Source: Takakia lepidozioides (taxonomy: Eukaryota; Plantae; Bryophyta). Taken from it: a stretch of DNA of 64,000 nucleotides. The translations under genes were made by a program, and so were the position numbers. The stretch's first letter is position 1. Every line of letters starts with the position of its first letter. The DNA lies in contig CM060734.1 in NCBI GenBank assembly GCA_030704615.1, forward strand, positions 42,470,001 through 42,534,000. Reading direction: 5' to 3'. Below, piece after piece: positions 4,481-57,374 of the stretch. The notes under the pieces were generated by a model. That model was given only the letters and a program-made list of their open reading frames with translations. It had not been told where the DNA came from and made no database searches.

Positions 4481-4526
4481 AACTAGAAGTAGGTAATTCT
4501 AGTTAACCATGACTAAAACCATGACA
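4481..4526 (-). repeat. 46-bp LTR 5' terminus identical to 44075-44120
   Basis: Reverse complement TGTCATGGTTTTAGTCATGGTTAACTAGAATTACCTACTTCTAGTT matches 44075-44120 at 46/46. Confidence 0.9.
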
Positions 4527-5767
4527 AGGCTCTCTCTCTCTGCCTATGGCATCCACCCACGAGCTGTGCTTTCACAAGCCCCAGGAAACATATCAAACTG
4601 ATGGCTTAACTCGGGCCTATCCAATGGTACCAACCATTCCTTATCTTTTGCTAACGCCTTCATTCCCATGCAAGAAGAACACCATGAATAGTGCACAAGA
4701 AATCAAAGGCATAGAGATAAAACCCCCCTTAAAATACCCGTACCAGGGACCCGCAGTCCCTCACAGGGTCCGTCGCGATATCCAGCGGTTAAAACCGATA
4801 CCCCGCGGCCAGCGCCACGCGGCGCGGCGTTACTAGCCCGCCGCCGGCGCAGATCCAGTGGGTAATAGCAGGCTCCCGTCATCTCTGCCGCTCGTGTCGT
4901 ACCTACGCGGGCCCAGCTATGGCGCCTGGTGCTGCCACGCAGTGTACCAGCAACCCGTACTTTGCTCAACCGCTGGGGGGGGGCTTGGGCCAAGGAACGG
5001 CCATTGGTTTTATTAGATCTCGGGAATCACCTAGAGGTTTGAATTGCTATCATTCACCCGATGGACTGACCATTGAGGTTGAAACTTTGGATTGCTCCAA
5101 GTAGGGGAGACTGACTTGGGAAAGCGGATCCGGTCCCTTCCTCGTAGGTAGGAAACTAATCCACCTCGGGATTTAGGGGGGGCATTGGGCGGGAGATAGA
5201 TGATCCCCGTTTCCCTGGGCTTGGGATTTGCTTTGTGAAGGGATTTGAAGGTTCATCCCGGCTATAAGCGTGTTGGGAGTCCGGGCACGTAGGAAGTAGT
5301 AATAAACAAAGACTTGGAATGCAATTACGATTAAAGACGTAGAAAACCCATAAACAAAACGTAGGACTAGGTAGTAGGAAACGCAAATCGCCATGTGAAG
5401 TGGAGTTGTCAAGCTTTGCTTTGCCAGTAGGAAGTTAGAATGTGTTAGATCCACCCATAGCTGCCACGGACCCCTGCACTTACCGCAGTCGGGTAGGCGG
5501 TTTGTTTATGAGCCCAACCTACACCGCAACTTACCACGACCCCCTAGGTTAGTATGTCGTCACCCTGGCTGCGCGAGACCAGGGCTCGTCACTGGGCAGC
5601 AAAGAGATTATGAATCCTCCCCCACACACCAATGATCTGTTTGTAAAATCGAGGGAGTAATGAAAATATTGCTCTGTGTGTAGATGTACCTCCCTCAACT
5701 TAGTCACCATCTCTTTGCCCTCTAAAGATCCACATACAGCAATATGCCATCAAAGAATACATCACTT

Positions 5768-25600: not shown

Positions 25601-28600
25601 GCTCCTCATCCAGTCCTCCCCTCCAGTCATACTCTCTGACTCCTCGAGGTCTTCTTGTAGCAGGTAATCTACTAGATTTCTTTGTGGTAATTTGTATCTC
25701 GTGCATCCCATTATGCACAGTTAGTAACTGAGAATTCCAGTCATGGAATACCCTGGCCTGTTTCAGCCACGGACGTCCCAATAATAAGGAATAAGCCTCC
25801 ATGACTTCATCCATTTTTAATACAGTTACTGTGATCAGAAAGATCATTTTCTGTATCTGTATCTTAACTCCTCTTATTAATCCCAATGGCTGTACACTTC
25901 TTTGATCTGCCATTGTTACTGTAAATGGGGCTGGTTTCATGTTACTTAGACCAAGCTTCTTCCTTAATTGGTCTGTCATGATATTTACTCCAGAACCACC
26001 ATCTATCAGTACATCAGTTAGTTCTGTGCTTCCAATTCTCAATTGGATTACTGGCATAGAATCATCAAAGTCCATGACTGGTTCTCGCCCTTCCGGCTTC
26101 ACATTATAACTGGTCACCTTGCTGTTCAGGTCTGTGTTTCCTGTTTCTTGGGCAATTCGATTGATTGCCTGATACAGCCTGTGCCTACAATAAGGTGCCA
26201 CAGCTAATAGCTGTCCAATGGTAATTTCTGCTTTGGTCTGACATATTACTTCAGCCAAAGTCTCTTCATTACTTTGCATGTCTGCATCTTCTTTTCTCCT
26301 TTCTTCCTCACTCCCTCTTTTTCTCCATCCGAATCAGAGGAATCTGCCACAGGAATATCAGTACTCTTTTGCATTTCCCTTATAGTATCTGCCACTTCCT
26401 TGTGCAGTTCCTTCTCATCCTTCCAAGTCTCTTCCTCTTCGGGCATATCATTGCCACTTCCAGTCTCATCTTCTTCCTCTTCTACTGGAGGTATTAGTTT
26501 AGCTTTACTTCTTGTTACTATCATTGTACTTACTTCTGGTACAACACATGGCCTAACCATGTGAGCTGCCACCACTGGGCCCTCATTCACAGGAGCTCTC
26601 ATCTCATTCTGGTGTCTTATCCAGAATGAACAGGCTGCCTTGCGATGTCCTGGCTGATTACAATAGTAACATAGCTCTTCACCATTGGGTCCTCGCCCTT
26701 GGTCTGGTCTTGGATTATTTCTATAATCCTGATTCCCGGGCTGGTAATTCCCCTCGGATTACCCTGATAGTTGCCTCTGGAATTTCCTTGGTAATTCCCT
26801 CTTGAATTACCTCTTCCTTCCATGCCATTGTTATAACCACCAGACCTACCATAGTGGTCCTGATCATTGCTTCTTCTTGGCTGGGGTTGCACCTGATGCA
26901 CCCTCACTTGCCTAGGTTCTCTGGCAGCTGTCCTTCTGTTGTAGTAACAATTCTCAGTAGAATGGTTATCCATTTTACAGATAGTACAGTGTTTCTCCTT
27001 CATGTGGCATTCTGTAGTGGTATGGCCTTCATTCTGGCACTTTGCACACCATACACCCTTCCTCCAATGTGTTGCAGCCTCTGTGGCATACTTCTTCAAG
27101 ATTTCTTCCAATCTTTTCTCATAGTTATCCCTCTTCAACTTTTCCTTTCTCTTACTCTTTCTTTTTAGTTCTTGCTCTTCTTCTTCATCTGACTCATCTT
27201 CAGAGTCCTCATCTTCCTTTTTCTCTCTCCTGAGCATTCCCAATTGCTCAATTCTGTTCGCAGTTTCAAATGCCTCCTCCACTGTATTATGGGGTAACAT
27301 ATCCACTTTCTTCTGCAACTCTGGTCTTAGTCCACTCACAAACCAAGTCTTCTGTAAACCGGGTGCTGGTACTGCAGCCAGCTTTTTCATCATCAATTCC
27401 ATCTTCTCCATATACTCTTCAACAGTTTCATGCTTCTTCTGCTTCAGCTGTTGTAAACTTCCATACACTTCATCCTCAGTTTTACTTGTCCTGAACCTAT
27501 TTCGAAATGCTGTATTCAAGCCATTCCAGGTTAGGAAATGATTATCAGGGAATCTTGCATACCATTCACTTGCTTTCTTGATAAGTGAACAAGGAAACAG
27601 TCTCATCTTGGCATCATCGCCATTCTCATTGTTCACTATACACATGTGCTCAAATTGGCTAATGTGTACATCGGGATCCCCTTTTCCTGAATATATTGGA
27701 AAGGGTGGTTTTGCCCGTGTTGGTTGTAACGCCATCTGTGGCCCTACCTTCTGCCCACTGACAGGTGCTGGCACCCTTGCTGGTGCTGGTCCTTCTGGAC
27801 CTGTTGTTTTTGTGGTGGATCTTCCACCAAGTGGTGGCCCTTGAGCACTCCCTGCTTCTGGCCCCACGATATTCACAGTATTCCCAGCTTCAGTTGCACT
27901 ACTTCCCACACTCCCTGTCCCCCCAGAGCCAGATCCAGGCAGCCCGCCTGATCCCCCTGAGCCGACACCTTCGTTGGCCTGTGATCCAAGTGCTCCACTT
28001 GATCCAGGTCTAACGGGTTGGGATGTCCTGGTTGTAGTCTCAACCTCAGCTGTTGGGTCTACTTCTTCATATTCTTCCTCTTCCAATTTCTTCTCTCTGT
28101 TTTCATCATTCAAGTTCTGCCCTTGGGTTTCTTCTTCACTCATGTAACTCAACTGTAATGGTGTTGGAGAGTCTGAACTCTCCGTTGGCTCTGCCACATC
28201 CTCATCTCCTTCTTCATCTTCTGCTTCAGAAACTGGAGTTCCTGCTTTTGGTGTTCCATGCCAACTTTTATCAAAGATTTCTGTCAAATCTTTTATCCAA
28301 GGATGTACCTCAGATCTTTCACCTCTTGATTGATCTTCTTCCTGTACCAATTCCCTTAATCTTTCTTGCAAAGAAACAGAAGGAGTGGCATCCAACTCTA
28401 GTTCTTCCGGTATAGGTGATGCACTTTTTGATCTTGATGGTGTGAGAGGTCCAGATGATTCCCCTATGTCTATTCCTCTCTCCCAAAGATATGGATAATT
28501 AGCTTTCAGATAGCTTTCCCTTTTTAATGAATATCTTTGTCGTCTAGCTTCTCTTTCATCACTCATGTCCCATGTCTTTCATTTCTTTTTAATGTGGCAA

Positions 28601-34160: not shown

Positions 34161-36786
34161 ACCGTATCAAGAAGTATTGCACTATTTAACAGGGTTCTTG
34201 ATTCTAGTAGCACCAGAACAAATTAGTACTACAACCCATGTGTGTGGGCTTGCTTATTTTTTGCTTACTGGGCCTTTTCAGGCATGGATTTTTGGACCTT
34301 GTGGCCTTTGAGGTATCCATTGGGACAGTGGTCTCATTTGGATTTTTGTAATATAATTTGCAGGGCGTGTATTCCCCAGTACTTGTCTATTTTGACTGTC
34401 ATTGTGGTTGCTAGTATGCAAGAGGGGTCCATTCTATTTTTATATCGGAATTTCACCATTTAATGAAGAATCTAGTTCTATGTTTTACACGATTATGTGT
34501 GTGATTGACTCTGGATAGAATAAATTAAACAATAATACCATTTAATAAAAATTTCCAAACTGCTATCCCCCTGTTTTTTAAAATGAAATATAAATTTAAT
34601 AATTTAAAATTATAAATATAAACTGTTAAGTTATTTTCAAATAACATTCTTGATGACACGTGGCATAAACCCTGCTCGAACTAGAATACGTGGCATTATA
34701 TGACAAGACATTCTTTTATCGATATTTTCACCACGTGTAAAGATAAGTAGTCATATATGCTAGTCATATATTTTGTCTAAGTGTCACATGTCACATCTGG
34801 AGTGCAACAGGTGTTGTGACGTATCGCTTGCGAAGTGGTGCACGTGTTCCTCTAGAGCCTCTCCATGTAGGCAACGCTCAGCACACAATGTAGTCATATA
34901 GTTAGTCATATGTAAGTCATAGAGTTGTGACTACATCACTCTCTTATGCATGACTCCAGGTGCCACGTACGCAGTCACGGCTATGACTTGCAAAACGCAG
35001 TCCTAAAGACTAGTCGCTATGACAGGGGTTTTTTCACTACAGAGTGATGTAGTCATGAACGCATATAGGACTGAAAAAATAGTCATATGTGCAGTCATAA
35101 AAACGCTTATCTGTTGTAGTGTGTATTCATTCCCTTTTGGCTTAAGTTTTGTGGTGGATGGTTGATCAAGCAAGTGATGCTTATGTGGAGCATGCTTCCC
35201 AAGTGTGGCTTCCAATTTCAAGCTTGAGGAGAGCTAGAAGGTAAAGGGAGCAAGTTGATTCCTTTGTGTACGAGGTGATGCATGTGTGGAGCATGCTTTT
35301 GGCTTGAGCTTTGCAATTTCAAGCTTGAGAGGAGTGGCTCTTGAGCTAGCAAGTGAATGGAGCTTGAATGACCAAGGCTTGAGAGGAGACAAGGCTTGGT
35401 GGCTTGCCAAAGGAGGTACAAGCTTGATTTGGAGTTCCAATGAGAAATTGAGCTTGTTGTGTGGCCAATGCATTGCTAGTTGAGTTGGAGACAAACTTGA
35501 GTAGCTTAAGGTGAAGAAGATCAAGGGAATTTGCCTTGGTACCCCATAGAATTCATGATGCTTGAGGGGATTAAGCATAGAGCCCCAAGGAGCACAAACC
35601 CTAGCTTGGTAAGGCTAAATCTCAAGGAAATAGAGGGGGAAGTGGCTAAAGCCTAGGGGAAAATGGCTAAACCCTGGGGGGAAATGAACTACTCTATGAG
35701 GGGGAAATGGCTATTCCTAAGGGGAATACAAGGGGAATACGTATAGGCCCAGGGGAATACTTGGGGAATACTATGGCATATTCTCAAGAATATTCCTAGG
35801 GAATTTTGGGAATTTATTGGGAACCCATTGGGAACCCATTGGGAACATGGTGATATAGGAAGAGTCCTTGGAGGACAGTTTGGAGGACCATAGGGAGTCC
35901 TTGGAGGACTGTTTGGGGTCCTGAGAGGACCCATTGGAGGACCATTGGGAGTCCTTGGAGGACCATTTGGAGTTCTTTGGAGGACTATTTGGGGTCCTTG
36001 GAGGCCAATATTTGGCGAGCTTGAGGAGTCTTTGGCGACTTGTGTGAGGGACTATTGGGGTCCTCGAGGGCTAAGTTTTGGCAAGCTTGGGGCCTTGGTG
36101 TACTGTTTTGGAGTCCCATCGTGCAAGGATTGGGAGCCTTAGTGAGATTGTTTGAGAGACATATTCTTGAGGGCTCCGGGAGAGTTATTTAAGAGACCCT
36201 TGAAAGGTAGTCTTGTCTGTTGTTCAAGCAAGAGAGTGTGGAGATAGGGTAGTGGATGAGAGCATGTTGTGATAGGAATTGCGTTAGTCTCTCTTCTTTG
36301 TAGTCTTCCACCCTCTCTATAGGCCAAAACCTTTCCGTAGGTGGAGGCAAGAGTCAGTCCGGGTTTGGGCTGGGGTGTCATTGCAGGAGCGACACTGTGG
36401 AGTATTTTTGATGTGGGGGAGTTGTTGTATTGATTTTCTTGTGTTTGGATCCTCTCCACACCGACATGCTTGACTGTGCGTCATGTTAGCTTTGTGTGGG
36501 CGCTTGTTTTTTTAGGAGGTTGGTCCGGATTTAATCCTAGAGCGTGCTGTCGGTGGTGAGGCTGGGGTGATGACCAGTCAGACCATCATTGTTTCTCTTA
36601 TGGTGAGGCTGGGTTGATGACCAACAGACCGTAGGAGTGCTTGCGGTGGATGCAGGTGCAGGTTTATGTTACGAACCTAGTAGTCTCAGCCATAAGCCGG
36701 AACAGGTTCTCTACTCGGTTATCTTGTGGAAAGGGGGATTAGAGACAGGTTTACAACATGTGTGGTTGTGAGTTTTTATCACGGAG

Positions 36787-38289
36787 GTGCCATCAGTTGC
36801 TGAGGAGAGTGCCGGTACGAGCACCAGCGATACTAGTGGGTATACAAGACGAGGTGTGCGGTTTAGGCCACCTTCACCTTCAGTGTCTTCTGAGGAAGGT
36901 TCAAACTCAGAGTTAGGAGGATTCTCGCCGAGGGTGCAAGCCATTTCCGTGCCATTGTTGTGGGACACGATGGAGGAGATGTATGGAGCTACCAAGGGGT
37001 CACGTAGGTACTCTGGAGCTGTGGGCACCATCGAGCTTGATGACTTCATATAAGAGTTTGATAGTTGGTGTGATTTGCAGCAGATGCGCAATCCACAACT
37101 GTTTACGCCTTTTATGGCGTGGAAGGGGCTGTTTCAGCACCTTGAGGGGCCGCCCATGGATGATTACCATGAGTTTAGGCGGGGACATGAGGTGGAGATT
37201 GAGGAATGGCGGGTATGTTGGTCACCTGACTATGTCTCCATCACTAGAGGCACAAGGGCAGTGGTGACACCGGCAGCTATATCGGCAGCTTCTGCAAGCA
37301 GCAGTGGGACGTCAAGTGGGACAGGAGCTGGGAAGTCCACCCAAGCTCCTGCTACAGCACTAACACCCGTGCCTGCCTTTAACCCAGTTGTGGAGTTCTT
37401 CGAGGAGTTAAGGAGAAACTACCAAGGGATAAGGACGGAGAAATTGCGGAGTTTGCAAGAGTTCCAACGAAAGCCTACCGACACTTTAAAGGAGGCTTAC
37501 ACTCGCATGAGGCGCTTGATAAACGTAACCCAAGGGGTTACAGAAGCTCAGGCAATCCAATTCTGGTATGGGATATTGGACAAAGAGCTGAGGAGAAGGG
37601 TGCGGGATGCAACTCTCCTACAAGTGGCCCAACCCACCTTAGCAAACGTGTTTTTGCTGGCAGAGCGGATAGAGCTCAATATGGTGGAGGAGCGAGTAGT
37701 CATGGTGGGGTTTGGTAAGGAGACACAACGAAGTGGGGCTCCTAGCTCAAGACAACAAGGGGGCTTAGGCGAAGCCTAGGGAAGGGTCGAGAGGATCTCA
37801 ATTGCATAGGTCACTTCCTTCATTCTCAGGCCAACAACAGTCGGGTGTGACATGTTGGGATTGTGGAGGACCCCATGTTAAGAGAGATTGCCCAGAGAGA
37901 GGCAAAGGGCCGGCACAGGCACAACCTACACAACTACAGTGTAGGCATTGTGGCAAGTATGGGCATGAAGAGACCCATTATTATGACTTGCATCCTGAGC
38001 TATGGACAGGCCAGTTCCAAGGGAACAATGGTGGCCGAGGACGAGGCAATGTAGTCTAGAGAGGTAGAGGAGGCAGAGGTCGTGGTGGAGGTCGTAACCA
38101 AAACCAAGGAGCACAGGGTCGCGGTCAAGGTCATGACCAAGGCATGGTAGATAGGCTTGCCTACAGCTAGAGCAACGTCTTGCTACCATGGCCACTACTC
38201 ATGTTATGCCTGCTTCAAGGCCTGAGGTTTAAGCCCCACCTGCACAACCTCCTATGCCTAGGGAAGACCAGATTGGTATGGGCTTCATG
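36787..38289 (+). pseudogene. gag: gag (stops/frameshifts)
   Basis: LQEFQRKPTDTLKEAYTRMRRL..FWYGILDKELR; knuckles CWDCGGPHVKRDC and CRHCGKYGHEETH; RG-rich tail. Confidence 0.8.
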
Positions 38290-39136
38290 CACTACAATAG
38301 ATCGCGGTAGTTATGACTGCCAAACCGTGGTAGTCATGGTTTTCATGACTTTGACCATGACTGCACCATGTTTTTATAAAAAATTGACCTCCCGCAGTCG
38401 TTCGTACGAATGTAATCATATGAACGACTATCTAAATAGTCGTCTGTATGATTACACGGCTCCGGAATGGGCGGAAGGCTGGTCAACGGCAATTGACTAG
38501 ATTTAGCTCACCATTCATAGTCATTTCCATGACTACAGTGTACATGGATGAGGTTACATAGTCATGATGACTACTGGGGATTTTGTAATTTGGTGTGTAT
38601 AATACAATTAAAACACCATATGATCATATGAATGACTAATGGGTGTATTGGTTAAAAGGTAGTGAACTATAACTCTTATAGTAAAGAGGTTGCAGGTTCA
38701 AACTCCTCTAAGTACAATCAAATGGATAAGATGGCCCTAGGGTTAGTAGGCGAGCTAGGGATAGCACGTGGTATCCTAGATGGACTGCCACGTGGTTTTT
38801 TCATTATTATAAAATGCATTATGCCACGTGGCACATTGCGGTGCGACGCGGCGTTTGACATATGTTTTTATTTTTCAATTTTTTTTAATTTAATTTAATT
38901 TTTTAAATCAATTGTGCTTCGCCACGTGGCCGGCAGCGGCAGCTGCAGTATGGTATATATGACTGCAGTGAGAGATATCACTTGGTTTATATGACTGTAG
39001 TCATCCGGACCGTACCATCTTGTACTCATTGTATTGACTTGGTTTGCACGACTTACAGTCATAGAAGTCATATGTACCGTTTATGACTGCAAAATAGTCA
39101 TATATACAGTCATAAATACCGTGATCTGTTGTAGGG
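38290..39136. mobile_element. Small non-autonomous CACTA element (847 bp)
   Basis: TIRs CACTACAATAGATCGCGGTAGTTATG and CCCTACAACAGATCACGGTATTTATG; TSD ATG (38287-89, 39137-39); ATGACT subterminal repeats. Confidence 0.9.
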
Positions 39137-39654
39137 ATGTGTGGAGCCGCACTTGCAGGACCATTGCATGTGGACTCTGCAGCTGCTGTCACTCGAGTCA
39201 AGAGGAGCGGATGTGGATTTTGATCCACAAAGAGAGGAAACAAGTCGGCAGACAAGGCTTCCACAGTCTTTCACATTGGCTGAGACAGTGCCAACTATGC
39301 CATCGATGGCACCCGCTCGCCCAAGTGTGTTAGAGGTAGAGCCACGAGTGCCATTGGGGAGAGTTGGTATGGCTCGGGAAATGCCAGTGGGTGGTACTGC
39401 AAAGCAAGGTGCAGCCAATACATTGTTGGGGGCGGCTACGGCAATTTGTCAAGCTTCATTGTTTTCTGCCATGTCAATTGCAATGTTGGGGATGCGACCA
39501 GCTGCAGTGTTTAGACTGGCAGTTGCACTCTCTGAGAGTGGTGATGCATCGACATTATCTGAGGGGATAGCAGATAAGATGCAATGCATGAATGCCCTGG
39601 ATTCAAGGGTGAAGATAGCCACAAGCTGCGCCATGGCAAGCGGCAGCTGCAAGG

Positions 39655-40026
39655 TTGCAGGAGTTGCCAGCTAGGTCAGCCATTGAGCGCAGTATGGTGA
39701 CTCCTGGGGTAGTCCTGGTGGACAATCAGGATGGTGTGTTTCAGTTGGGTGGCCCAGCCGAGAGGAGGTATAGGCCACTGCGAGTCTTGTTGGACTCGGG
39801 AGCACAGCCATTGATATTGGGGAGAGCAGCAATTGCAGGCTTGGGCCTTACAGAGGCAGATTTGGAGCCTTGCCCTTCCCAAATTCAAACATCTTTGGGC
39901 GGTTCAGAGAAGGCACGAGGGATTACACGCCATGAGCTCTTCATTCGATTGCAGCCAGATCATCCTATATATAGCGCTGTCATGAGAGCTCAAGCCATTG
40001 TTACGGACGCGATGTCTTATGATGTC
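39655..40026 (+). pseudogene. Retropepsin-like protease (3'-truncated)
   Basis: RVLLDSGAQPLILG..IQTSLGG..VTDAMSYDV, then an abrupt break. Confidence 0.85.
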
Positions 40027-40027
40027 A

Positions 40028-40288
40028 GCCTTGTATACGCTCATGAGCTTTCCTTTGTCTCATGTTTTTCGAGACAATGGTCCTACGTTGATTTGGGACA
40101 GTGTGCTACAGCAATTGGTGGAGCCCAATGCGGATGAGCGCGAGCCGGCAATGGGGTTTGCCACGGGCACTACAGCTGTGCCAGCTCTGTCAGAGGCATC
40201 ACGACGCCAGGTGTTGGGTCAGGCAATAGATCTCAATTGCTTGACATAGGTCATTGGCTTGTGCATGGCTGAGCAACGGAGATTGTAA
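40028..40288 (+). pseudogene. C5 DNA methyltransferase C-terminal part (motifs IX-X)
   Basis: ALYTLMSFPLSHVFRDNGPTLIWD..LVEPNADEREPAMGFATGTT..SEASRRQVLGQAIDLNCL, aligning by eye to DNMT3-type ELERIFGFP.HYT...RQKLLGRSW. Confidence 0.7.
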
Positions 40289-40699
40289 GCATTGGTGGCT
40301 ACTTCTGCACTTCCATTGGATATTGCACCATCTCTGCCAATCGGGACGGTGGAGGCAATGAGTGGGGGCAAGCACAGGATCATGGGGTGCAAACACCCAT
40401 GGCAGATGTGGGATGAGTGCGGAAAGAGAGAGTCCTTGGATCTCTCAAGCAGCAATATGAGGAGTGGGGAGAGCCATACACTGAGGATCAGTTAGAGGCC
40501 AAGGTGGCCAATGTTTTTGAAGAGGTTGAGCATGTTTCTTGCTCAGAGGATGTTCTCAAGGTGGCTATGGCGGAGCAAGTGGAGGCTACGCCACAGTCAG
40601 ATTGGGCGGACAAGGCCCAAGAGGTTGCTATCTAGCAACCAAAGGATTCGTCTCATACCTCCAAGCCTGGTGTACCCAAGGTTGTAGTCACTGAGGACA

Positions 40700-43412
40700 A
40701 TTGGGAACCAGATGTTGGACCTACAGTCACTGGAGGAGAGAGACGGAGGATCCAACGATTTCTAAGGGCTTATAGAAATTGTTTTGCCTTCAGTTTGAAG
40801 GATTTGGGGAGTTTGAAGGGTCAGGAGATTCGTATTGATTTGGCAAGTGACACGCCAATCTTTCGAAGGCCCTACCGGTATAGTGACATGGAGAGGTCAT
40901 TGATCCAGTCACGGACTATGGAGTTGTTCGAAGCTGGATTGGTGGAGTTGTCAGGCGGGGAGTATGCCTCGGCAATGGTGATGCCAGCTAAGAAGGATAT
41001 CTATGGCAATTGGACAAAAAGAAGGATGTGTGGGGACTATCGTCCTGTGAACCGTCAGACTAAGTCCGATAGATATGCCATGCCAACTCCAGAGGAGATC
41101 TTTGATGCCATTAGGCATGCAAAGGTGTTTAGCACATTGGACTTGCAATCCGGTTACCACCAGTTGCCAATCAAAGAGGCTGATAAGCAAAAGACGGCAT
41201 TCTGGGGGATTGACCAACATGGGAAGGATTGCTTGTACCAATGGCGGTGGATAGGATTCTCGCGGGGCTAGACTTCGCCCGGTGCTACATTGATGACATC
41301 ATCGTCTTTAGTGCTACGGTTGAGGAGCATGAGAGACACCTTCAGGTGGTGTTTGAGCGCTTGAGAGCGTACGGGTTGAAATTGCACCCTGGGAAGTGCA
41401 AGTTCTTCCACAACCAGATTGAGTATCTGGGCCACATGATATACCCTGGAGGATTGGGTGTTCAAAAGATAAAGGTGGAGGCCATTGCACGTATTCCACG
41501 CCCCATAGATGTTAGCAGAGTTCGTGCTTTCATGGGGTTGGCAAACTACTATCGACGGTTTGTCAAGGGATTTAGCAGCATTGCAAAGGCTCTTACCAAG
41601 TTGACCAAGGTGGGTCAGGAGTGGCTGTGGGAGGAGGAATAGGAGGAAGCCTTTGAGGAACTCAAGGCTCGATTGACTTCTGCACCTATTCTGAGGCGGC
41701 CTATTCGGGGGCAGCCTTTCCAGCTACATACGGATTGGAGTATGCTGGGGATTGGAGTAGTGCTCACACAGGTGGATGATGAGGGAAGAGAGTTCGTAGT
41801 GGCATTTGCTAGCCGCTCGAACAATGATGTCGAGGCGAAGTATAGTTCATATGAAGGGGAGTGTCTAGCTGCGGTATGGGTAGTGACACATTTCAGATGC
41901 TACCTCTATGACAATCTCTTCACCCTTGTCACGGATCACCAACCATTGAAGTGGTTGATAGAGTCAGACAAGCTTACAGGGAAGCTTGCACGGTGGGCAC
42001 TTATGCTTCAAGAGTACGACTTCCAAGTGGTGCATCGAGCCGGTATTGTCAATCGGGATGCAAATGGATTGAGTCGTAATCCATGCACGAGCGAGCACGA
42101 TGATACTGGAGCTCGGTGGCATGGTGAGACAGATGAGGAGATGGTGCCAGGATGGCATGCATCGTCCTTTTTGTGCATTCTAGCAATGGGAGCTCAAGCT
42201 GGTCTATCCCATGCGATTGGTCATGTAGATAGCGTGCATGACGATCCAGAGACTAGTGAGGAGTTTGGTGGTGCTAAGGATGTGCATGAAGATGCAGCAG
42301 TGTTGGCATACCTTCGTACCGGAGAGACAACGGCCAATGTGACTGCTAAGGAGAGGGATCGGGTCCTACAACAAGCTAAGAGGTTCAAGTGGGAGGAGAC
42401 TTACCTACTCCGGGTATGGGAGGATGGACAAGTGAGGATTGTGCCTCATCCAACACAACGAGTGCGATTGGTACGCCATGCCAATGAGGAGTTGGGACAT
42501 TTTGGGGTGCGGCGCACTCATAGTTTGCTGCAAGGGCAGTATTGGTGGCGGGGCATACACACGGATGTGCAACAGTTAGTGGCAAGGTGCATGGTGTGTG
42601 ATAGAGTGCGGGCTTCTTTCAATGCACCTACTCCACAATTGCATCATTTATCCATTATGGGTTTGGGCTATCGTTGGAGTCTTGACTTCGCAGGCCCATT
42701 GCCACTAACGATTTGCCATAACAAGTATGTGCTGGTGATGGTGGAACATTTCTCCAAGTGGATTGAACTGGTGGCATTGCCTGACAAGACAATGGAGGGG
42801 GCTGCGTATGCATTCTTAGATCGAGTGCTTAGCCAATTTGGTGCTCCAGCCGAGGTACTCACGGACCAGGGGAGAGAGTTCTTGGGGGAATTTCAGGCTT
42901 TGTGTGAGCAAGCCTTGATAGATCACCGCACTACTTCTCGGTTTCATCCCGAGGCTGATGGCTTGGCAGAGAGAGTTGTACAAACAGTCAAGCGAGGCTT
43001 GCGCAAGTATGGCTTGCAAAAGGGACACTTAGGAGATTGGGACCTTCAGCTATCTTGGTTGGCCATGGGCTACAGGTTTAGCAAACAAACATCACTTGCC
43101 TCGTTCTTGCCTTATTTCCTTCTCTTTGGCCGAGAGCCAGATTTGTCTGCATCGATTCGCAGGGAGACTGCAGTAGTCCTCAACCTTGATGATCCGGATT
43201 TGTGGACACAAGCATGTGCCGAGCGGGCAGAGTTGTTCAAGAGAGTCATGCCTATGGCTTTTGAGAACCTTGCTATTGCCCAACACCGAGACACATTGAG
43301 GTACGCCACTCTACGTCGAGAGGGATATCGGCCAAGTGTTCGGTGTTTCCACCCTGGGGACTATGTGTATCTGCAGCAGACAGCGCCTACGACCTTGGAT
43401 GTCACAGCATGA
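40700..43412 (+). pseudogene. pol: pol: RT, RNase H, integrase
   Basis: RMCGDYRPVN, LDLQSGYHQ, YIDDIIVF; LHTDWS, EGECLA, TDHQPL; LGHFG..CMVCDR, WSLDFAGP, TDQGREF, GLAER. Confidence 0.93.
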
Positions 43413-43580
43413 CGTGTGATTCTAAGGGTCAGGGAGGTGTTGCCTTCAGGAGTGTTGATTCTGGAAGGTCGAGACGGCATGGTATGGAAAGACCATGTGC
43501 GCAATTGTGCGCCATGTCACCTTCCACATGTAGATGGGAGGATAGATCCCAACCTTGCAGTGGTACCTGCAGGGTTGCGT

Positions 43581-43715
43581 TGCATGCTATGTGGGCATGC
43601 TGGTGGCGCCGTAACCATGTTGGTGTGTGACAAATGCTCAAGGGGGTGGCACATGGGATGCTTGACACCGTCACTTGAGGAGGTTCCTATCGGAGAATGG
43701 TTGTGTCCACGATGC
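43581..43715 (+). CDS. PHD finger at the integrase C-terminus
   Basis: CMLC..MLVCDKCSRGWHMGCLTPSLEEVPIGEWLCPRC (C4HC3), in the integrase frame after a single TGA at 43410-12. Confidence 0.92.
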
Positions 43716-43976
43716 CTTGGACAGAGGTAGTGGGCATGACAATGGTGAGGCGGACAAGTGATCCAAGGTCTAGCTAGTGGGGCTTCAATGCCATGAATAC
43801 TCAACTGAAGATCATGGATTGCATGAAGGCGACTAACGATGGGGCTACGTTTGCACCCGGCCTCTTGATCTATCGACTTCAGGTGTTGGGACTTGTGCAA
43901 TTGAAGACCAAGCGATGATCCTATTGAGATGGATACTTGTCAGCTATCCGGTGTTAGAGGGACCTAATCACCAGCT

Positions 43977-43987
43977 AGGGGGGCGAT
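43977..43987 (+). promoter_or_regulatory. Polypurine tract
   Basis: AGGGGGGCGAT directly before TG at 43988. Confidence 0.7.
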
Positions 43988-44527
43988 TGTGGCATAGCTT
44001 TCTAGGATTGTGTGCTTAGATTGTGTGGTGGACAACGATGTATGTTGTGGCACGATGCTTAGGTGCATGACAGTTGTCATGGTTTTAGTCATGGTTAACT
44101 AGAATTACCTACTTCTAGTTAACTAGGACATTTTTGATATTTATATTTGTATTTTGTGTGTTGGGACTTCATTTGGTCTCACATGCCAAGTGAGGTGTCA
44201 AACCTCACTTGGGACATGGGGATGGGTTTTCCCCTTGTGAGCGTTGAGGAGGGCTCATCTTCTTGTAGTTGAGCCTCCATGAGCCTCTCCCACCTCCATA
44301 GCTCTAGGTATTGAGAAGGAGTGTGGTGAGGGCTTTGTAGGGTGGATTCCTTTAGCAAAGGTGCCCTTGGCTTGACTTAGTTTATGTGATTGAGTGGATT
44401 CATGAGTGGAGTGTTTCCCTTGTGTTCACTTTCATTATCGATTGTGGCATAGCTTTCTAGGATTGTGTGCTTAGATTGTGTGGTGGACAGCGATGTATGT
44501 TGTGGCACAATACTTAGGTGCACAACA
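43988..44527 (+). repeat. 3' LTR region: 85-bp LTR-end copy + GT + 453-bp LTR (44075-44527)
   Basis: 43988-44072 is nearly identical to 44443-44527; TGTCATG...CACAACA termini. Confidence 0.75.
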
Positions 44528-47500
44528 GCCCAAAGATAGGGAGAAGAGAATCCCTGGTAGGGGTTTGCAGAAGGTAGAAGATGACATGTTCCAAATTCGT
44601 TCTAGGCTGGTTGTTTGCATAAATTAATCAGATTATATTGGAAGTAGGTGGAAAAGGCGCAGGGAATGGACCCTGGGACCCACTGAATGTTTAATCATTG
44701 TTTAAACACCAGGGTGGCAATCGGATGAGAAACTGATAGGAGGCGGCTTTCATTCATCCTGGCCCGGTGATTACTTAAGTTGCTAATGCATTATTGATTG
44801 GGTTTGGTATAGGAATTTAAGGGCGCTCCCAAATTGGAGAGCGGTTCTCCAACGCTCCGGACGTAAAGGGCGTTCCCAGGGCATTCCCCTGTTACCTTGA
44901 CGATAATTTGGTTAGTTCCAGGATCCTATGAGGGTTCTCTATTTCTACGGATTTCATGCATTTGTAGGAAGATTTTAATTATTTGTTCTTTATTATTCAG
45001 CAAGGTAAATTCACCTTTAATAAGGGATTTAATCCGGACCCCCTTAACTTTAAAAATGGAAGTTTTAAGGGAGGCATCGCCCCCTTCCGCCGAGGATATT
45101 TGAAGGTAAATACCCGGGGTCAACTCCCCTCACGGGGGAAGGGCGCGTCACCCGTGTTAGATGCGCCTTTCTATGGCGATTCTAAGCAACCTCCTTGGTT
45201 GACCTCCAGCCTAGAGGCGCCTAAGGCGCCGGCACTTTAGTGCTAGGCTCTGCCCTTTTTGGCAGCTCTTTACAAAATAGCTTAACCACTTATAAAGCTA
45301 GTTAGCACTGCCTCCCATGGTCCTCCATGGCCAGGGGGCTTATGAACATGTAAATGAATTTAATAATATGGAAATTTTGGCGATAGCTTCGCCGTCTCAT
45401 GCAATATGGCCGTTACCACTAAGCTAGAAATGGAACTTTGACAAGAGCTTCGCCACTTCATGCAAGCTTGTCCTCTCCTTAGACTTAATAATGGACATCT
45501 ACCCTCACTTCCCTGACGTCATTGGGTTAGATTCCTAAAAGCCCTGTCTCTTTGGGCTTCACACCTGTGCTCATCACACATGCACATCAAGATTCACACA
45601 CATCCTCTTTGAAAGAGGATTAGTTTTTATAAATTTCTAGCAAACAATGATATAAGGTCCCTTCTTGGGAAAGCTTGAACAACACACTGAACAAATGAAT
45701 TCAAAGGTCAAGATAATATGGTAAGTCACCCTCTGAAACAAGTGGAGCTTGGGATGCACTAAATCGCTCGGTAGAATGGTTCTCAAATTTGGTCCTCCTT
45801 CGGCCTCTTATTCGTCCTCAAGTCTCCCACTTCATGGAGCGCTTCCTCTACTTCTTGCCTCACATGGCCACAAGGCCTTGAGCTAGGACTATCCCGCTCT
45901 TAGTATGCTTGCTTCTACTATTAGAGAGCCACAAGCTCAACCCTCTAGCTAGCTCCCTCAAGCTCAAAACTAACTACACAAGCAAGAGGCCAAAGCAAAG
46001 AAATGAGTCTAGATGAAGAACAAGATGAGCTTGCTCTTCTTTTATTGTGTTTTTGGGGCCTCTTAAACTAGTGAATAATAGTCTTAAACTATTATTTCCT
46101 ACATGAGTCTATAATTTAAAAACGATAGAACACAATAAACTACTAACCATGGATGGAAAACCTTGGAGATAATGATAATGTGGTTTCTTCATCCATCCAA
46201 TGGATGACCAGTTGGCGCTAGGTTATTTTTTCATCCATCCAGCTTGCAGGTCGAATTTCCATTTTTCATCCATTGGATGAGCTAGAATTCCATTTAATCG
46301 TCCTTCGCAACTGCCTCCAGCTTGATAATTTGATGTCGTCTTTCATCACCTCCATAAATCACCAAACTTGGTGAAAATTTATAATTAGATGCCTCGTAGC
46401 TGCCCATAAATGCTCAGGGGAATCGGGGAAGAAAAGCCAACTTTTTCTGCTGGTTTCCATGGTTCTGCCATACAGGGAGTCTGCCGCTTTATGGCAGTTA
46501 AAATACTGGTGGTGCCCCAGGGGTTTTTGGCCCTGCCACTAGGTCATAGATCTTCTGGAGTTCCCTCCTACTCACTTTGCATCGCTGAGGAGTTCAAAAC
46601 TTCGCCGGAAAGCTCCTTCAACCGTCGTTTGCTCCGATACAGCACTTGCTTTGTTGCGATATTTCATCGCTATACAGATTGTTTTCCTCCAATTGCCAGG
46701 ACTCCTCGCCGTGTGCTCCTACTGGACTTGAAAGGCGGGAGAATAGAGAGATCGTAATCCGGGACTGGAACAGTCGTCATGTATTGTTTCGAACAGGTGC
46801 ATGTTGTCGTTACTGGTACTAAATTGGCAGCCTAATTCGCTGTCGATGCAGTGCCCTACGGTCATTTTGACGCCAGAGCTTCTCTCCATGGTCGTCTCCT
46901 ACATTATCTAAGTTCCTACGTGCTTTACCAGCGATTCCCAGATAACTCGCAAACTGCCCTGTTTTGGCAGTACAATGCCTAAACTGTCTGCCTTAAGATC
47001 AAAAACGATCTGAAAAGAAATTTGTTCTAGTATATGCATCTACACCCAGCACCTACATAGGCCCTCCAACTGTGGTTGATGGCATTAGTCACTTAAGGGA
47101 TAGTTTTCTATAATAGCCAGGCTTGCAGTACACTTTGATAGCAAAATGTGAGATTTGTGAAAATGATGTGATCTCAATGAGTCAATCTTATGGTAGGCCA
47201 AACATTCCCCAAAACGTATCCTGAAGCCCAATCATCTATTGTATCCCAAATAAAGTTTGTAAACACGGCCAGTTGGCCCTTTCCTAGGGTAACCGCATCT
47301 TCAATCCATTATCTTGCAGCAGCGTTGGGGATTCACATTGAATCCCTAATCTACTAATAAGATACACTTTCCAGCGTACTCAAGCAAAATGTTTGATACA
47401 TGACAACCTTTCCTGGAGGGTTATAGAACCTTCAGTGTGCCACATATTAAAACCTGCTCTACTCCCTACTGTCTCACAACTGAATTTAAGTTGGGCATCA

Positions 47501-54680: not shown

Positions 54681-54780
54681 CCTATAGTGTGAAACTAGCT
54701 AGAAAATAGTTAGTTTTGATATATTGACATTTGGGATTGATCCAAGTGTCAATCCAGGGCCCAATGTATTTTTGGGCACC

Positions 54781-55341
54781 TGGCGTGGACCGTCAGGAGA
54801 GGAGGAGAGTGCGGGGATTGCACCAGGACCACCTCAGTTGTCACCATTGGACACCACATCTATTGTGTGGCAGTATCCGGATGAAGGCATTTGCATTCTG
54901 GACTTGTTTGGCGGGATTAACACCGGATTGGCTGCTGTGCTACAGGCATGTGTATGGGTTCGGCATTACCTGTATGTGGAGAGGGATGAGATTGCACAAC
55001 GCGTCTCACTTCGCCATGTTGCTCAGTTGGTGCAGCAGTACCCTGAGTTGTTGCCGGGTTGTCTGAGTCGTGGATACCAGCAGGCCTTGCCAGCAGACAT
55101 TTCGTTGCTGGGGGCGCAGGATTTGGAGCGGGTTGGCTCCATTCATTTGGTGGTGGCAGGTTGGCCCTGCCAAGGGTATTCATCAGCCGGGCATGGCAAT
55201 GGATTGCGAGACTCGCGGTCGGGTCTGTTTTGGAAGATGGTGCGGGTTTTGCGCCACTTACAGCTTCATCTTAGCTGTATCTCCAGCATACATCTTGGAG
55301 AATGTGCCACTGATGGGCGATTCTTGGGCCAGGGTGATGGC
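54781..55341 (+). pseudogene. C5 cytosine DNA methyltransferase, motifs I-VI (retrotransposon-type), truncated by an LTR insertion
   Basis: ILDLFGGINTG (I), YVERD (II), ADI (III), VVAGWPCQGYSSAG (IV, catalytic Cys), DSRSGLF (V), and after a frameshift near 55270 YILENV (VI). No introns. Confidence 0.92.
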
Positions 55342-55914
55342 TGTTAAGGACAAGAACATGATTGAACACAAACAAGAAATCAGACTAGAGATACAAGACT
55401 AGACAAGAAGTCAAGGCCGGCGTGGCCGAATGCATGGTGGGTAAACATGAATGATCTTTATAACAATGGACAATAGTACAAGATACTGGAACTCGACTCG
55501 AATACTGGAATGCTGGAAACTGGACTGGGGTACCAGATACTGAAAACTGGACTTAGAGTACTGGAAGTTGGACTGGAGTACTGGGACTGGGAACAATAGT
55601 AGCTTGAACTTGTGTTGGCGAGACTGAAGAGTGTCCAGTCTCGCCTCATATATATACTGGCTACTAGGAGGTTCCCTAAGAGGCTTCCCCAAAGGAGGTA
55701 TATTGATGGAGAAGTTTCTTCAAATGAAGCTTCCTGAGCAGTTTCCCAAGTTACTCTCAGTAATTTGGTAAACTCCCGATAGCTTGGTAACTAATGGTAA
55801 CTTATGGTAAATCATGGTAGATCATGATAAATCACGGTAATTTTTGGTAACATGGTAACTTGGTAACTTCTGGTATTTACTCTGTGTAAGTTCATCTGGG
55901 CTATGTCTGTGACA
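55342..55914 (-). repeat. 3' LTR (573 bp) of another LTR element, with PPT at 55915-55927
   Basis: TGTTAAG...GTGACA; minus-strand PPT AGAGGAGGGGTGA adjacent; internal short ACTGG and TGGTAA repeats. Confidence 0.8.
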
Positions 55915-57374
55915 TCACCCCTCCTCTAGCGCCGAGTTCCTCGAGGAGCGGCAAAATCTTGGACTTGCTTAGAGTTGGAGAACCTCCATCCTTAGTGTGT
56001 ATCAGATACACTGAATGTGGAGTCTTCACCTTGAAGCTAACTTGGTTGACATCATCGTTGTGACGTCTTATTGACGTGTAGCTCAGGGCTTAGCTGGCCA
56101 CTAGTACAGATTATCGTTTTTATGACTGTAAATATCACTACATTTGTAGTGATAAGTGCGATTATGACTACATCACTATACAGTGATAAACACGAAGTCA
56201 GTTCTACCATCACTGCGGAGTGATAAGTGCGAAGTGATGGTCGTCACTGCAGACGTGGCACCTGCCCAACGACTCAGAGTGACGTGGGATGTAATGCTGT
56301 AGTCATAACTATACGACTACAAGGTTACGTGTCATGACTACACTTACGACTACGTCACTACAGATGAGCGCCAACATGGAGAGGTCTCTCTATGACTCGT
56401 GTGACCCCCCGGATGTATATGACTACACTTATGACTATATCACTACTCACTACATCACTGAAGGTAGCGCGTGGCATATTTCATGACTACAAATATGACT
56501 CTATCACTATAGCTTTGTTTTGGTTCTGGTAGGTCATCTAACACGTGTCTTTATTCGATTAGTTTTTAAAAAACATTAATGCTATTTTATTTATTTATTT
56601 CATGTAAATTTTATTTATCGTTTTGATATTCAGATGCGTTTAAATATTATAGAGCAATATATTTAATTGAATGAAAGAATTTCACACAAATACATAGATT
56701 GTCTCTGGAATGTCGATCATATTGCAAAATTCCAATGGAAAAATTTCCCATGGATGCCACAAAGGCTCTACAATCAAGAAGCTTGAAAGGCCATAGGGAT
56801 ATATAACCAAGCCTCAAAGGCTACAAGTCCCAAAACCCAAGCCCACACAGGGGCAGCAGTCCACTAGTACTCCTACAATTGAAAAGCTATATTTATATAT
56901 CACCATTGTGGCATATTTTCAACTACATTGCATCATGTTTCAGGAGCTTCAAGCTCCAAATTGTGGTGTTTCCTATCACCTGCCCCAACTCTCTCAGAGG
57001 AGCATACTTATGTTTGCCTCTTTGATGGATAGAGCAGCATAATCGAGTGGCACCACAGGGTACCCGTCACTCACCTTGCTCCCTTGCAGACCAACAAAAA
57101 GTCCACATCCAAGCGTTTGTTGTTGACATCAAGTAGCCGAACATAATCCCCCACCTTGAACTGTCATCCCAACTCCCACATACATAGAAGTATATATCGA
57201 AACTCCTTAGAAGTGTTGGACTAGCAACCAGCTACATACAACAGCAGCCCAAAAGCAACTACTGCTTAGGGGATTGCCTAAAGGCCTCTTGCAGGTAAGC
57301 TGCCAAGCATTTCTGATCCTCATAATGGAAGACTTTGGTGACAGATTGAGTCCCACGGAATAGACCATCAGATT

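What the first reader, a model, noticed from the sequence alone, without database searches (positions are those of the whole stretch)
36461..44527. Ty3/Gypsy retrotransposon encoding a cytosine DNA methyltransferase between protease and RT, plus a PHD reader
Seen: after the protease breaks at 40026, the sequence continues with EPNADEREPAMGFATGTT..RRQVLGQAIDLNCL, which fits C5-MTase motifs IX-X, then leads to RT-RH-IN-PHD. Motifs I-VIII are deleted here, but motifs I-VI occur at 54781-55341. Known: DNMT-bearing retrotransposons were reported in dinoflagellates and the alga Klebsormidium; I do not know of a description in land plants. Inference: the family polyprotein is gag-PR-DNMT-RT-RH-IN-PHD, a chromatin writer plus reader that may methylate its own cDNA or insertion site.
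Basis: partly seen in the sequence, partly recalled or inferred. Interest (0 to 1): 0.92.

Follow-up and report, generated by a model that had tools for sequence, protein, structure and literature searches.

The report
Dead Gypsy retrotransposon with DNMT remnant
This is a broken copy of a plant jumping gene whose family carries its own DNA-methylating enzyme (DNMT3 type) and a histone-reading PHD finger; the family was described only in the alga Klebsormidium, and here it turns up in liverworts, which are land plants.

Summary
Window 40028-40246 encodes the last ~73 residues (motifs IX-X) of a DNMT3-type cytosine methyltransferase. It is joined directly to a truncated protease at 40025/26 and followed by RT, RNase H, integrase and a PHD finger. 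Window 54709-55369 is a separate fragment of the same enzyme (motifs I, IV, VI).

Intact relatives have the inferred order PR-DNMT-RT-RH-IN-PHD. One is a 2358-aa polyprotein from an environmental assembly. Genomic copies occur in Calypogeia fissa, Riccia sorocarpa and Klebsormidium nitens. Marchantia polymorpha has annotated PR-DNMT-RT-RH proteins.

The family profile and an AlphaFold model both match DNMT3A/B best. The DNMT and RT trees place both window pieces in a liverwort clade. The 3' end shows the unusual B-A-B repeat arrangement reported for KnitGypsy-Dnmt3.

The window copy is dead. About 400 codons are deleted, it has stops and frameshifts, and no 5' repeat was found.

I rate it a new land-plant member of a known kind, not a new system. 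Whether the enzyme methylates DNA is not shown; the published yeast test of the Klebsormidium enzyme was inconclusive. First-stage readers noted the same family, reportedly with complete DNMTs, on other pieces of this genome. I could not read those pieces.

The parts
36970..37779 (+). gag region (ORF 37075-37779; weak Retrotrans_gag)
   Evidence: Pfam PF03732 E 0.0011. DNA similarity to the C. fissa copy starts at 36970. Matches gag of P0170, P0174 and P0072.
37802..38059 (+). CCHC zinc knuckle, in a different frame from gag
   Evidence: Pfam zf-CCHC E 0.011. tblastn to Marchantia P0072 at 47% identity.
38060..39190 (+). Stretch with no match to relatives (degenerate linker or inserted DNA)
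   Evidence: No tblastn hits. A short repeat at 39082-39134 also occurs at 35066-35119.
39195..40026 (+). Pre-protease region and aspartic protease (DSG 39787-39804), cut off at 40025/26
   Evidence: Pfam Asp_protease_2 E 0.0032. tblastn: P0330 54%, P0336 50%, P0060 (C. fissa) 48%. Contigs of related copies run on past 40025 with unlike sequence that continues the protease frame (table 7).
40028..40246 (+). C-terminal ~73 residues of a DNMT3-type methyltransferase: motif IX 40136-40159, motif X 40202-40234. TAG at 40247-40249 replaces a conserved Trp. Weaker homology continues to about 40315-40426.
40693..41642 (+). Reverse transcriptase (YIDD 41286-41297), with a frameshift near 41230-41260
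   Evidence: Pfam RVT_1 in two ORFs, E 4.5e-6 and 3.2e-15. tblastn to P0336 at 57-62%.
41673..43412 (+). RNase H and integrase (579-aa ORF), ended by an in-frame stop
   Evidence: Pfam RT_RNaseH 1e-33, Integrase_H2C2 1.6e-13, rve 2.9e-14. 74% identity to Riccia sorocarpa and 63-81% to C. fissa proteins.
43416..43730 (+). PHD finger at the integrase C-terminus (Cys/His core 43581-43715)
   Evidence: Pfam PHD 1.1e-10. The best solved relatives include CHD4, KDM5B PHD1, PHF21A and AIRE, which I recall as readers of unmodified H3K4.
43976..44528 (+). 3' terminal structure: polypurine-like tract 43976-43983, repeat B1 43984-44073, repeat A2 44074-44438 (starts TGTCATGG), repeat B2 44439-44528 (ends ACA-G)
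   Evidence: B1/B2 are 94-96% identical. The same PPT-B-A-B layout occurs in C. fissa, Riccia and K. nitens copies.
54709..55369 (+). Separate fragment of the same DNMT: motif I 54898-54927, motif IV (PCQ) 55156-55182, frameshift near 55270-55285, motif VI (ENV) 55289-55309. No protease or RT beside it.
   Evidence: Pfam DNA_methylase 1.1e-9. 74% identity to P0330 and 66% to Marchantia P0336..

Best explanation
The stretch from about 36970 to 44528 is a dead, internally deleted copy of a Ty3/Gypsy-type retrotransposon. Its family carries a DNMT3-type cytosine methyltransferase between protease and reverse transcriptase, and a PHD finger on the end of integrase. This is the lineage published as KnitGypsy-Dnmt3 in Klebsormidium, found here in a land plant, most likely a liverwort.

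In this copy one deletion of roughly 390-440 codons joins the protease at 40025/26 to the last quarter of the DNMT. Further stops and frameshifts break the rest. The piece at 54.7-55.4 kb is a second fragment of the same family's DNMT.

Shown here:
- the anatomy of the copy
- homology to intact relatives
- the DNMT3-like profile and fold of the family enzyme
- retention of the catalytic motifs
- fewer amino-acid-changing than silent differences in the DNMT between liverwort copies

Inferred for intact family members:
- the DNMT is made as part of Pol and released by the protease
- it deposits 5mC on the element's cDNA, its new copies or nearby host DNA
- the PHD finger steers integrase towards chromatin with unmethylated H3K4

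None of these functional steps has been demonstrated.
For: Anatomy and homology:
- The window is colinear with intact polyproteins. P0188 reads PR-DNMT-RT-RH-IN-PHD; P0050, P0155, P0180 and P0179 read gag/PR-DNMT-RT-RH-IN.
- Land-plant copies share the order: C. fissa L002, Riccia L004, and Marchantia proteins P0336 and P0353.
- K. nitens L003 reads PR, DNMT motif I, an assembly gap, motifs IX-X, then RT-RH-IN-PHD.
- Among the proteins retrieved that carry the DNMT, 67 have the protease-side order and 63 have the DNMT between RNase H and integrase.

Identity of the enzyme:
- The family profile matches DNMT3A at 5.6e-25, DRM at 1e-13 and M.HhaI at 1e-10. The C-terminal block aligns to DNMT3A motifs IX-X.
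- An AlphaFold model of P0188's DNMT has pLDDT 93.5. Its top 50 PDB matches are all DNMT3A/B/C, with TM-score by target 0.42-0.86 and at least 0.79 for the isolated catalytic-domain chains.
- Motifs I, IV, VI, VIII, IX and X stand in the normal order in liverwort copies.

Phylogeny and selection:
- Both window pieces fall in a clade with C. fissa, Riccia and Marchantia, supported at 98 in the DNMT tree and 99 in the RT-RH tree. The two trees are broadly congruent.
- DNMT of C. fissa against Riccia: 323 codons, pN 0.22 against pS 0.67.

The deletion and the termini:
- Related contigs run past 40025 with sequence that continues the protease.
- The same PPT-B-A-B end with a palindromic CA/TG junction occurs in four species. 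This matches the A-coding-B-A-B arrangement reported for KnitGypsy-Dnmt3 (PMC5890265).
Against: - No 5' repeat (A1) was found in the window, so the 5' border and full element length are unknown.
- The species is coded, so 'liverwort' rests on nearest relatives only: 63-81% protein identity and about 69-74% DNA identity to C. fissa and Riccia.
- Synonymous sites are saturated, so the selection estimate is only qualitative.
- The K. nitens DNMT could not be placed in the tree because of an assembly gap.
- No reference set of DNMT1, CMT, DRM and DNMT5 was available for a formal DNMT3 phylogeny.
- Enzymatic activity is unproven. KnitGypsy-Dnmt3 gave no methylation in yeast, reported as inconclusive.
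Confidence: 0.9

Rival explanations
1. The short stretch at 40028-40246 only resembles methyltransferase motifs by chance, and the element is an ordinary Gypsy copy.
For: The 83-aa ORF has no Pfam hit and no PDB hit on its own.
Against: It matches the DNMT C-terminus of 90 independent proteins at the expected distance from the N-terminal match, with E down to 1e-27 and 9.5e-36. The profile aligns it to DNMT3A motifs IX-X. It falls in the same clade as the N-terminal fragment.
Confidence: 0.01
2. The DNMT pieces are fragments of a host DNMT3 gene or pseudogene that lie next to or inside a retrotransposon by accident. The enzyme is not part of the element.
For: Both pieces in the window are fragments. 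The one at 54.7 kb has no retrotransposon domains beside it.
Against: Uninterrupted ORFs join PR, DNMT and RT in many unrelated assemblies. The same order recurs in C. fissa, Riccia, Marchantia, Closterium and K. nitens. The DNMT and RT trees are congruent. No introns interrupt the domain.
Confidence: 0.02
3. The two DNMT pieces in the window come from one original copy. A rearrangement moved the middle of the DNMT 15 kb downstream, rather than there being two independent dead copies.
For: The fragment at 54.7 kb (P0330 residues about 294-499) lies wholly inside the part missing from the element (P0330 residues 191-582). The two do not overlap, are on the same strand and fall in the same small clade.
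Against: The fragment covers only about half of the missing part. The family is very abundant in this organism: 31,456 contigs of one run laid on 5.6 kb, so a second copy nearby is unremarkable. There is no overlapping sequence to compare.
Confidence: 0.15
4. The liverwort elements gained their DNMT independently of the Klebsormidium elements (convergent capture) or by horizontal transfer, rather than by descent within streptophytes.
For: In the RT-RH tree the K. nitens copy sits in a different sub-lineage from the liverwort clade, and deep branches are weakly supported. No K. nitens DNMT was in the DNMT tree.
Against: The two share the same domain order, PHD finger, PPT-B-A-B ends and junction palindrome. 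All Gypsy-borne DNMTs retrieved form one group apart from the five outlying rows; the one of those checked (P0067) carries RT, C5-DNMT and Dam domains.
Confidence: 0.1

Closest known systems
KnitGypsy-Dnmt3 of Klebsormidium nitens (de Mendoza et al. 2018, PMC5890265)
   Same: A Gypsy-type element with a non-rearranged DNMT3-type domain inside the Pol ORF. It has the A-coding-B-A-B repeat arrangement and a poorly conserved motif X. A K. nitens locus fetched here shows PR-DNMT-RT-RH-IN-PHD and the same PPT-B-A-B end with the same junction palindrome.
   Different: The host is a land plant. Liverwort copies form their own clade. The PHD finger is not mentioned in the paper's main text. The copy in this window is degenerate.
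SymbioDIRS-Dnmt3 and SymbioLINE-Dnmt of dinoflagellates (same paper)
   Same: Retrotransposons that carry a cytosine methyltransferase. The DIRS type also has A-coding-B-A-B repeats, and its DNMT methylated CG in yeast.
   Different: Those elements use a tyrosine recombinase or an endonuclease, not a DDE integrase with protease. The authors regard them as a separate acquisition.
Green-lineage Gypsy elements with the DNMT between RNase H and integrase (for example P0033, P0103, Haematococcus P0203)
   Same: Homologous DNMT, RT, integrase and PHD.
   Different: The DNMT sits at a different place in Pol. These elements form one well-supported clade nested among the protease-side forms in both trees. 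I found no description of this second architecture in the papers read.
Chromoviruses, and retrotransposons with PHD fingers
   Same: A chromatin-reading module on or near integrase. PMC6673714 states that many retrotransposons encode PHD fingers and that chromoviruses use chromodomains to direct integration.
   Different: Here the reader module is a PHD finger rather than a chromodomain, and it is combined with a DNA methyltransferase.
Host DNMT3A/B and plant DRM
   Same: The catalytic fold and motifs I-X. The best profile and fold matches are DNMT3A/B/C.
   Different: There are no PWWP or ADD domains and no DRM-type motif rearrangement. The domain is embedded in a retrotransposon polyprotein. 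Motif X reads G-Q-A instead of G-N.

Membership tests
Ty3/Gypsy (Metaviridae-type) retrotransposon | Pol order protease, RT, RNase H, integrase, with gag upstream | tested here: met
   Pfam on the window ORFs; colinear with full polyproteins.
Ty3/Gypsy (Metaviridae-type) retrotransposon | Two identical long terminal repeats with TG..CA ends, a PPT before the 3' LTR, and a target-site duplication | tested here: inconclusive
   The window has only PPT-B-A-B at the 3' end and no 5' repeat. The C. fissa copy has A1 at the 5' end, TG..CA outer ends and a candidate 4-bp duplication, but no B after A1. The repeats are therefore split rather than canonical LTRs.
Gypsy-DNMT3 lineage (KnitGypsy-Dnmt3-like) | DNMT3-type domain inside the Pol ORF | tested here: met
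   Met for the family. This copy keeps only motifs IX-X at that position.
Gypsy-DNMT3 lineage (KnitGypsy-Dnmt3-like) | A-coding-B-A-B repeat arrangement | tested here: inconclusive
   B-A-B is present in the window and in K. nitens, Riccia and C. fissa copies. A1 was seen only in C. fissa and is missing in the window.
Gypsy-DNMT3 lineage (KnitGypsy-Dnmt3-like) | Common descent with the K. nitens elements (RT and DNMT trees) | tested here: inconclusive
   In the RT-RH tree the K. nitens locus lies in the same broad group but in another sub-lineage, with weak deep support. The K. nitens DNMT is not usable because of an assembly gap.
C5 cytosine methyltransferase, DNMT3 class | Motifs I, IV (Pro-Cys), VI (ENV), VIII, IX and X in the unpermuted order | tested here: met
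   Alignments. In the window itself: motifs I, IV and VI in the fragment, and IX and X in the element. Some relatives have Glu-Cys instead of Pro-Cys in motif IV.
C5 cytosine methyltransferase, DNMT3 class | Closest to DNMT3 rather than to other classes by profile and by fold | tested here: met
   Profile against PDB: DNMT3A 5.6e-25, DRM 1e-13. Foldseek: the top 50 matches are all DNMT3A/B/C. A tree with DNMT1, CMT, DRM and DNMT5 references was not possible.
C5 cytosine methyltransferase, DNMT3 class | SAM-dependent methylation of cytosine in DNA | not testable with these tools
   The published yeast assay of the K. nitens domain showed no methylation and was reported as inconclusive.
PHD finger | Cys4-His-Cys3 zinc-binding pattern | tested here: met
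   Pfam PHD 1.1e-10; alignments to CHD4 and KDM5B PHD fingers. Which histone mark it binds was not tested.

The most novel reading that the evidence does not exclude
This would be the land-plant branch of one old green-lineage Gypsy clade with these properties:
- It captured a DNMT3 once.
- It later moved the DNMT within Pol, from the protease side to between RNase H and integrase.
- It has kept the DNMT under purifying selection, together with a PHD finger on integrase that I recall as the unmodified-H3K4-reader type.
- It replicates through a non-canonical A...PPT-B-A-B terminal structure with a palindromic CA/TG junction, despite using a DDE integrase.

If intact copies are still active in bryophytes, including the genetic model Marchantia, transposon-encoded de novo DNA methylation and chromatin-guided integration become directly testable in a land plant.
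Probability: 0.4. Interest if true: 0.75.

Novelty: new member of a known kind. Interest (0 to 1): 0.55.

Why it matters
Retrotransposons that carry their own DNA methyltransferase reverse the usual roles, because hosts use methylation to silence transposons. What such an enzyme does for the element is unknown. The only streptophyte example in the papers I could search is an alga that is hard to manipulate.

The same lineage occurs in liverworts. Copies are annotated only as hypothetical proteins in Marchantia polymorpha, and the family is very abundant in the genome scanned here. This gives a tractable land-plant setting to ask three questions:
- Is the enzyme active?
- What does it methylate?
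- Does the PHD finger guide integration?

The two domain orders and the conserved odd terminal structure are also leads on how these elements evolve and replicate. The copy in this window contributes only as a marker of the family.

Tried and rejected
- Pfam and phmmer-against-PDB searches on the 83-aa piece alone found nothing. A family alignment was needed.
- LTR search by self-BLAST, by sensitive BLAST with the 3' repeats and by pattern search found no 5' repeat in the window. The C. fissa repeats do not match the window's repeats at DNA level.
- A copy of repeat B after repeat A1 in C. fissa was tested and rejected; its score was no better than shuffled sequence.
- I tried to get a K. nitens DNMT for the tree. 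The locus fetched has a run of N across motifs IV-VIII. The two length-restricted protein searches returned no named K. nitens DNMT protein.
- dN/dS: synonymous sites are saturated in most pairs, so only pN/pS and a few ratios (0.16-0.20) are usable.
- Expression: two runs guessed to be RNA hold contigs of the family at 80-95% likeness. The run type is a guess and contigs cannot show transcription, so I claim nothing.
- CpG depletion is 0.52 observed/expected in the element against 0.48 for the whole window, so it is not distinctive.
- Literature searches for liverwort or Marchantia descriptions and for Marchantia gene identifiers found nothing relevant. Subscription-only papers were not searchable.

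Full report
**What is in the window**

ORF listing and Pfam show these parts on the + strand:
- a gag-like ORF (37075-37779)
- a CCHC knuckle (37802-38059)
- an aspartic protease (39655-40026)
- reverse transcriptase in two frames (40795-41642)
- a 579-aa RNase H and integrase ORF (41673-43412)
- after an in-frame stop, a PHD finger (43416-43730, Pfam 1.1e-10)

A second ORF at 54724-55347 hits Pfam DNA_methylase at 1.1e-9. It has motif I, the PCQ motif IV and, after a frameshift, ENV.

**Is the short piece really a methyltransferase end?**

Alone it has no Pfam or PDB match. I therefore searched 1.84 billion representative proteins with the N-terminal fragment. That gave 1249 hits, many of them 1200-2800 aa polyproteins.

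Ninety of the proteins retrieved match both window pieces. The C piece always lies about 110-120 residues after the N piece. E-values reach 1e-27 by blastp and 9.5e-36 by tblastn, and identity reaches 62%.

In a 22-row alignment the piece covers the last quarter of the domain. A profile of that alignment finds DNMT3A at 5.6e-25, DNMT3B/C next, DRM at 1e-13 and M.HhaI at 1e-10. Its C-terminal block aligns to DNMT3A motifs IX-X.

An AlphaFold model of the intact domain of P0188 has pLDDT 93.5. Its first 50 PDB matches are all DNMT3A/B/C. TM-score by target is 0.42-0.86, and at least 0.79 for the isolated catalytic-domain chains.

The stop at 40247-40249 replaces a Trp that is conserved in relatives.

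**Family architecture**

P0188 (2358 aa) reads protease, DNA_methylase, RVT_1, RNase H, integrase, PHD. It is the best full-length match to the window, at 50% identity over 846 aa.

P0050, P0155, P0159, P0180 and the Closterium protein P0179 read gag/PR-DNMT-RT-RH-IN.

A second architecture, RT-RH-DNMT-IN-PHD, is equally common among the hits: 63 proteins against 67.

**Land plants**

The following copies and proteins carry the family:
- A Calypogeia fissa locus (L002) carries gag, PR and DNMT, then a 4.6 kb insertion, then the DNMT end, RT, RH, IN and PHD. It is 69-74% identical in DNA to the window.
- A Riccia sorocarpa locus (L004) carries DNMT-RT-RH-IN-PHD.
- Marchantia polymorpha has annotated 'hypothetical proteins' with PR-DNMT-RT-RH, for example MARPO_0091s0058 and Mp_2g26090. 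They are 50-66% identical to the window pieces.
- Sphagnum proteins also appear among the hits.
- A Klebsormidium nitens locus (L003) reads PR, DNMT motif I, an assembly gap, motifs IX-X, RT, RH, IN, PHD.

**The deletion**

Relatives align to the protease up to 40026-40032 and to the DNMT end from 40022-40031. The missing part corresponds to P0330 residues 191-582, or P0188 residues 754-1193.

Contigs of related copies in public runs of the same organism match up to 40025 and then continue with unlike sequence. Read in the protease frame, that sequence continues the protease (table 7).

The same call shows the family is very abundant there: 31,456 contigs of one run laid on the 5.6 kb stretch.

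**Trees and selection**

In the DNMT tree (98 rows) both window pieces fall with C. fissa, Riccia and Marchantia in a clade supported at 98. The RH-DNMT-IN class is one clade (support 100) nested among protease-side forms. Five outlying rows stand apart; the one checked (P0067) carries RT, C5-DNMT and Dam domains.

The RT-RH tree gives the same picture, with 99 for the liverwort clade and 98 for the second class. This fits a single capture followed by co-divergence and one relocation. The root is not established.

Between the C. fissa and Riccia copies the DNMT has pN 0.22 against pS 0.67 over 323 codons. That is looser than RT-RH (0.14) and integrase (0.12), about as constrained as the PHD finger and tighter than the protease. 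Synonymous sites are saturated, so this is qualitative.

**Terminal structure**

The window has no LTR pair. Its 3' end reads polypurine tract, B1 (43984-44073), A2 (44074-44438), B2 (44439-44528). The same layout occurs in the C. fissa, Riccia and K. nitens copies. In each, the junction between the end of B and the start of A is a palindrome of the CA/TG kind.

In C. fissa a copy of A also stands at the 5' end. The outer ends are TG...CA and both flanks read CATC, a candidate 4-bp target duplication. No B follows A1.

This matches the 'A-coding-B-A-B' arrangement that de Mendoza et al. report for KnitGypsy-Dnmt3. I cannot explain how an element with a DDE integrase produces it.

**PHD finger**

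Its best solved relatives include CHD4, KDM5A/B PHD1, PHF21A, AIRE, DPF and ATXR5. From my own knowledge, these bind the H3 tail with unmethylated K4. Guided integration into such chromatin is an inference only.

**Literature**

- The 2018 paper describes Gypsy-DNMT3 only in K. nitens. Its survey had no liverwort. Its main text does not mention a PHD finger.
- It found no methylation by the K. nitens domain in yeast and called that result inconclusive.
- Later papers from the same group still cite only that case for streptophytes.
- Searches for liverwort descriptions found none.
- PHD fingers in retrotransposons are known in general.

**Earlier notes of this scan**

First-stage readers flagged the same family, reportedly with complete DNMTs, on other pieces of this genome. 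I could not read those pieces. They agree with the family-level result obtained here from other genomes.

**Verdict**

The copy in this window is dead. The system is a land-plant member of the published Gypsy-DNMT3 kind, and what the enzyme and the PHD finger do remains untested.

Noticed in passing
window 10427-16273 (-), within a larger minus-strand Gypsy region of about 10.4-29.3 kb: A 1948-aa ORF has an integrase at residues 23-193, followed by about 1750 open residues with no Pfam hit. That tail includes a 10-residue tandem repeat and a long Q/E/K-rich stretch that looks like coiled coil. gag ORFs lie at 19958-21130 and 26617-28566. RT pieces lie at about 16.8-17.9 kb and 24.6-25.0 kb, so there may be two copies. 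AT skew over 8-30 kb is strong, mostly -0.2 to -0.29.
   Followed up: partly
window 43976-44528; L002 20160-20760; L004 12490-13065; L003 13515-14360: Conserved 3' architecture of polypurine tract, B, A, B, with a palindromic CA/TG junction between the end of B and the start of A. The C. fissa copy has TG..CA outer ends and CATC on both flanks. The arrangement is not that of canonical LTRs, and its mode of replication is unexplained.
   Followed up: partly
window 4481-4527 (-): A 47-bp exact copy of the first bases of repeat A (window 44074-44120) on the opposite strand, without the neighbouring B repeat. It is probably a remnant of another copy.
   Followed up: no
proteins P0033, P0103, P0114, P0191 and Haematococcus P0203: A second architecture with the DNMT between RNase H and integrase, plus PHD. 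It forms one well-supported clade in both the DNMT and RT trees, and its named members are chlorophyte algae. I found no description of it in the papers read.
   Followed up: partly
L001 (environmental contig, 18357 bp): The contig is a head-to-tail repeat of one 8262-bp unit at 99.8% identity. Each unit holds the intact 2358-aa polyprotein and a 123-aa ORF. It is either a collapsed or circular assembly of a multicopy element, or a real tandem array.
   Followed up: no
window 35030-35121, 39082-39134, 56099-56190 (-): A short repeat of about 55-90 bp at 77-83% identity occurs at three places. One lies inside the unmatched stretch between the zinc knuckle and the protease.
   Followed up: no
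same genome, other pieces (first-stage notes): Several first-stage notes describe Mutator-like transposons carrying a ParB-like/DNA amino-methyltransferase gene in this genome. They are unchecked here.
   Followed up: no
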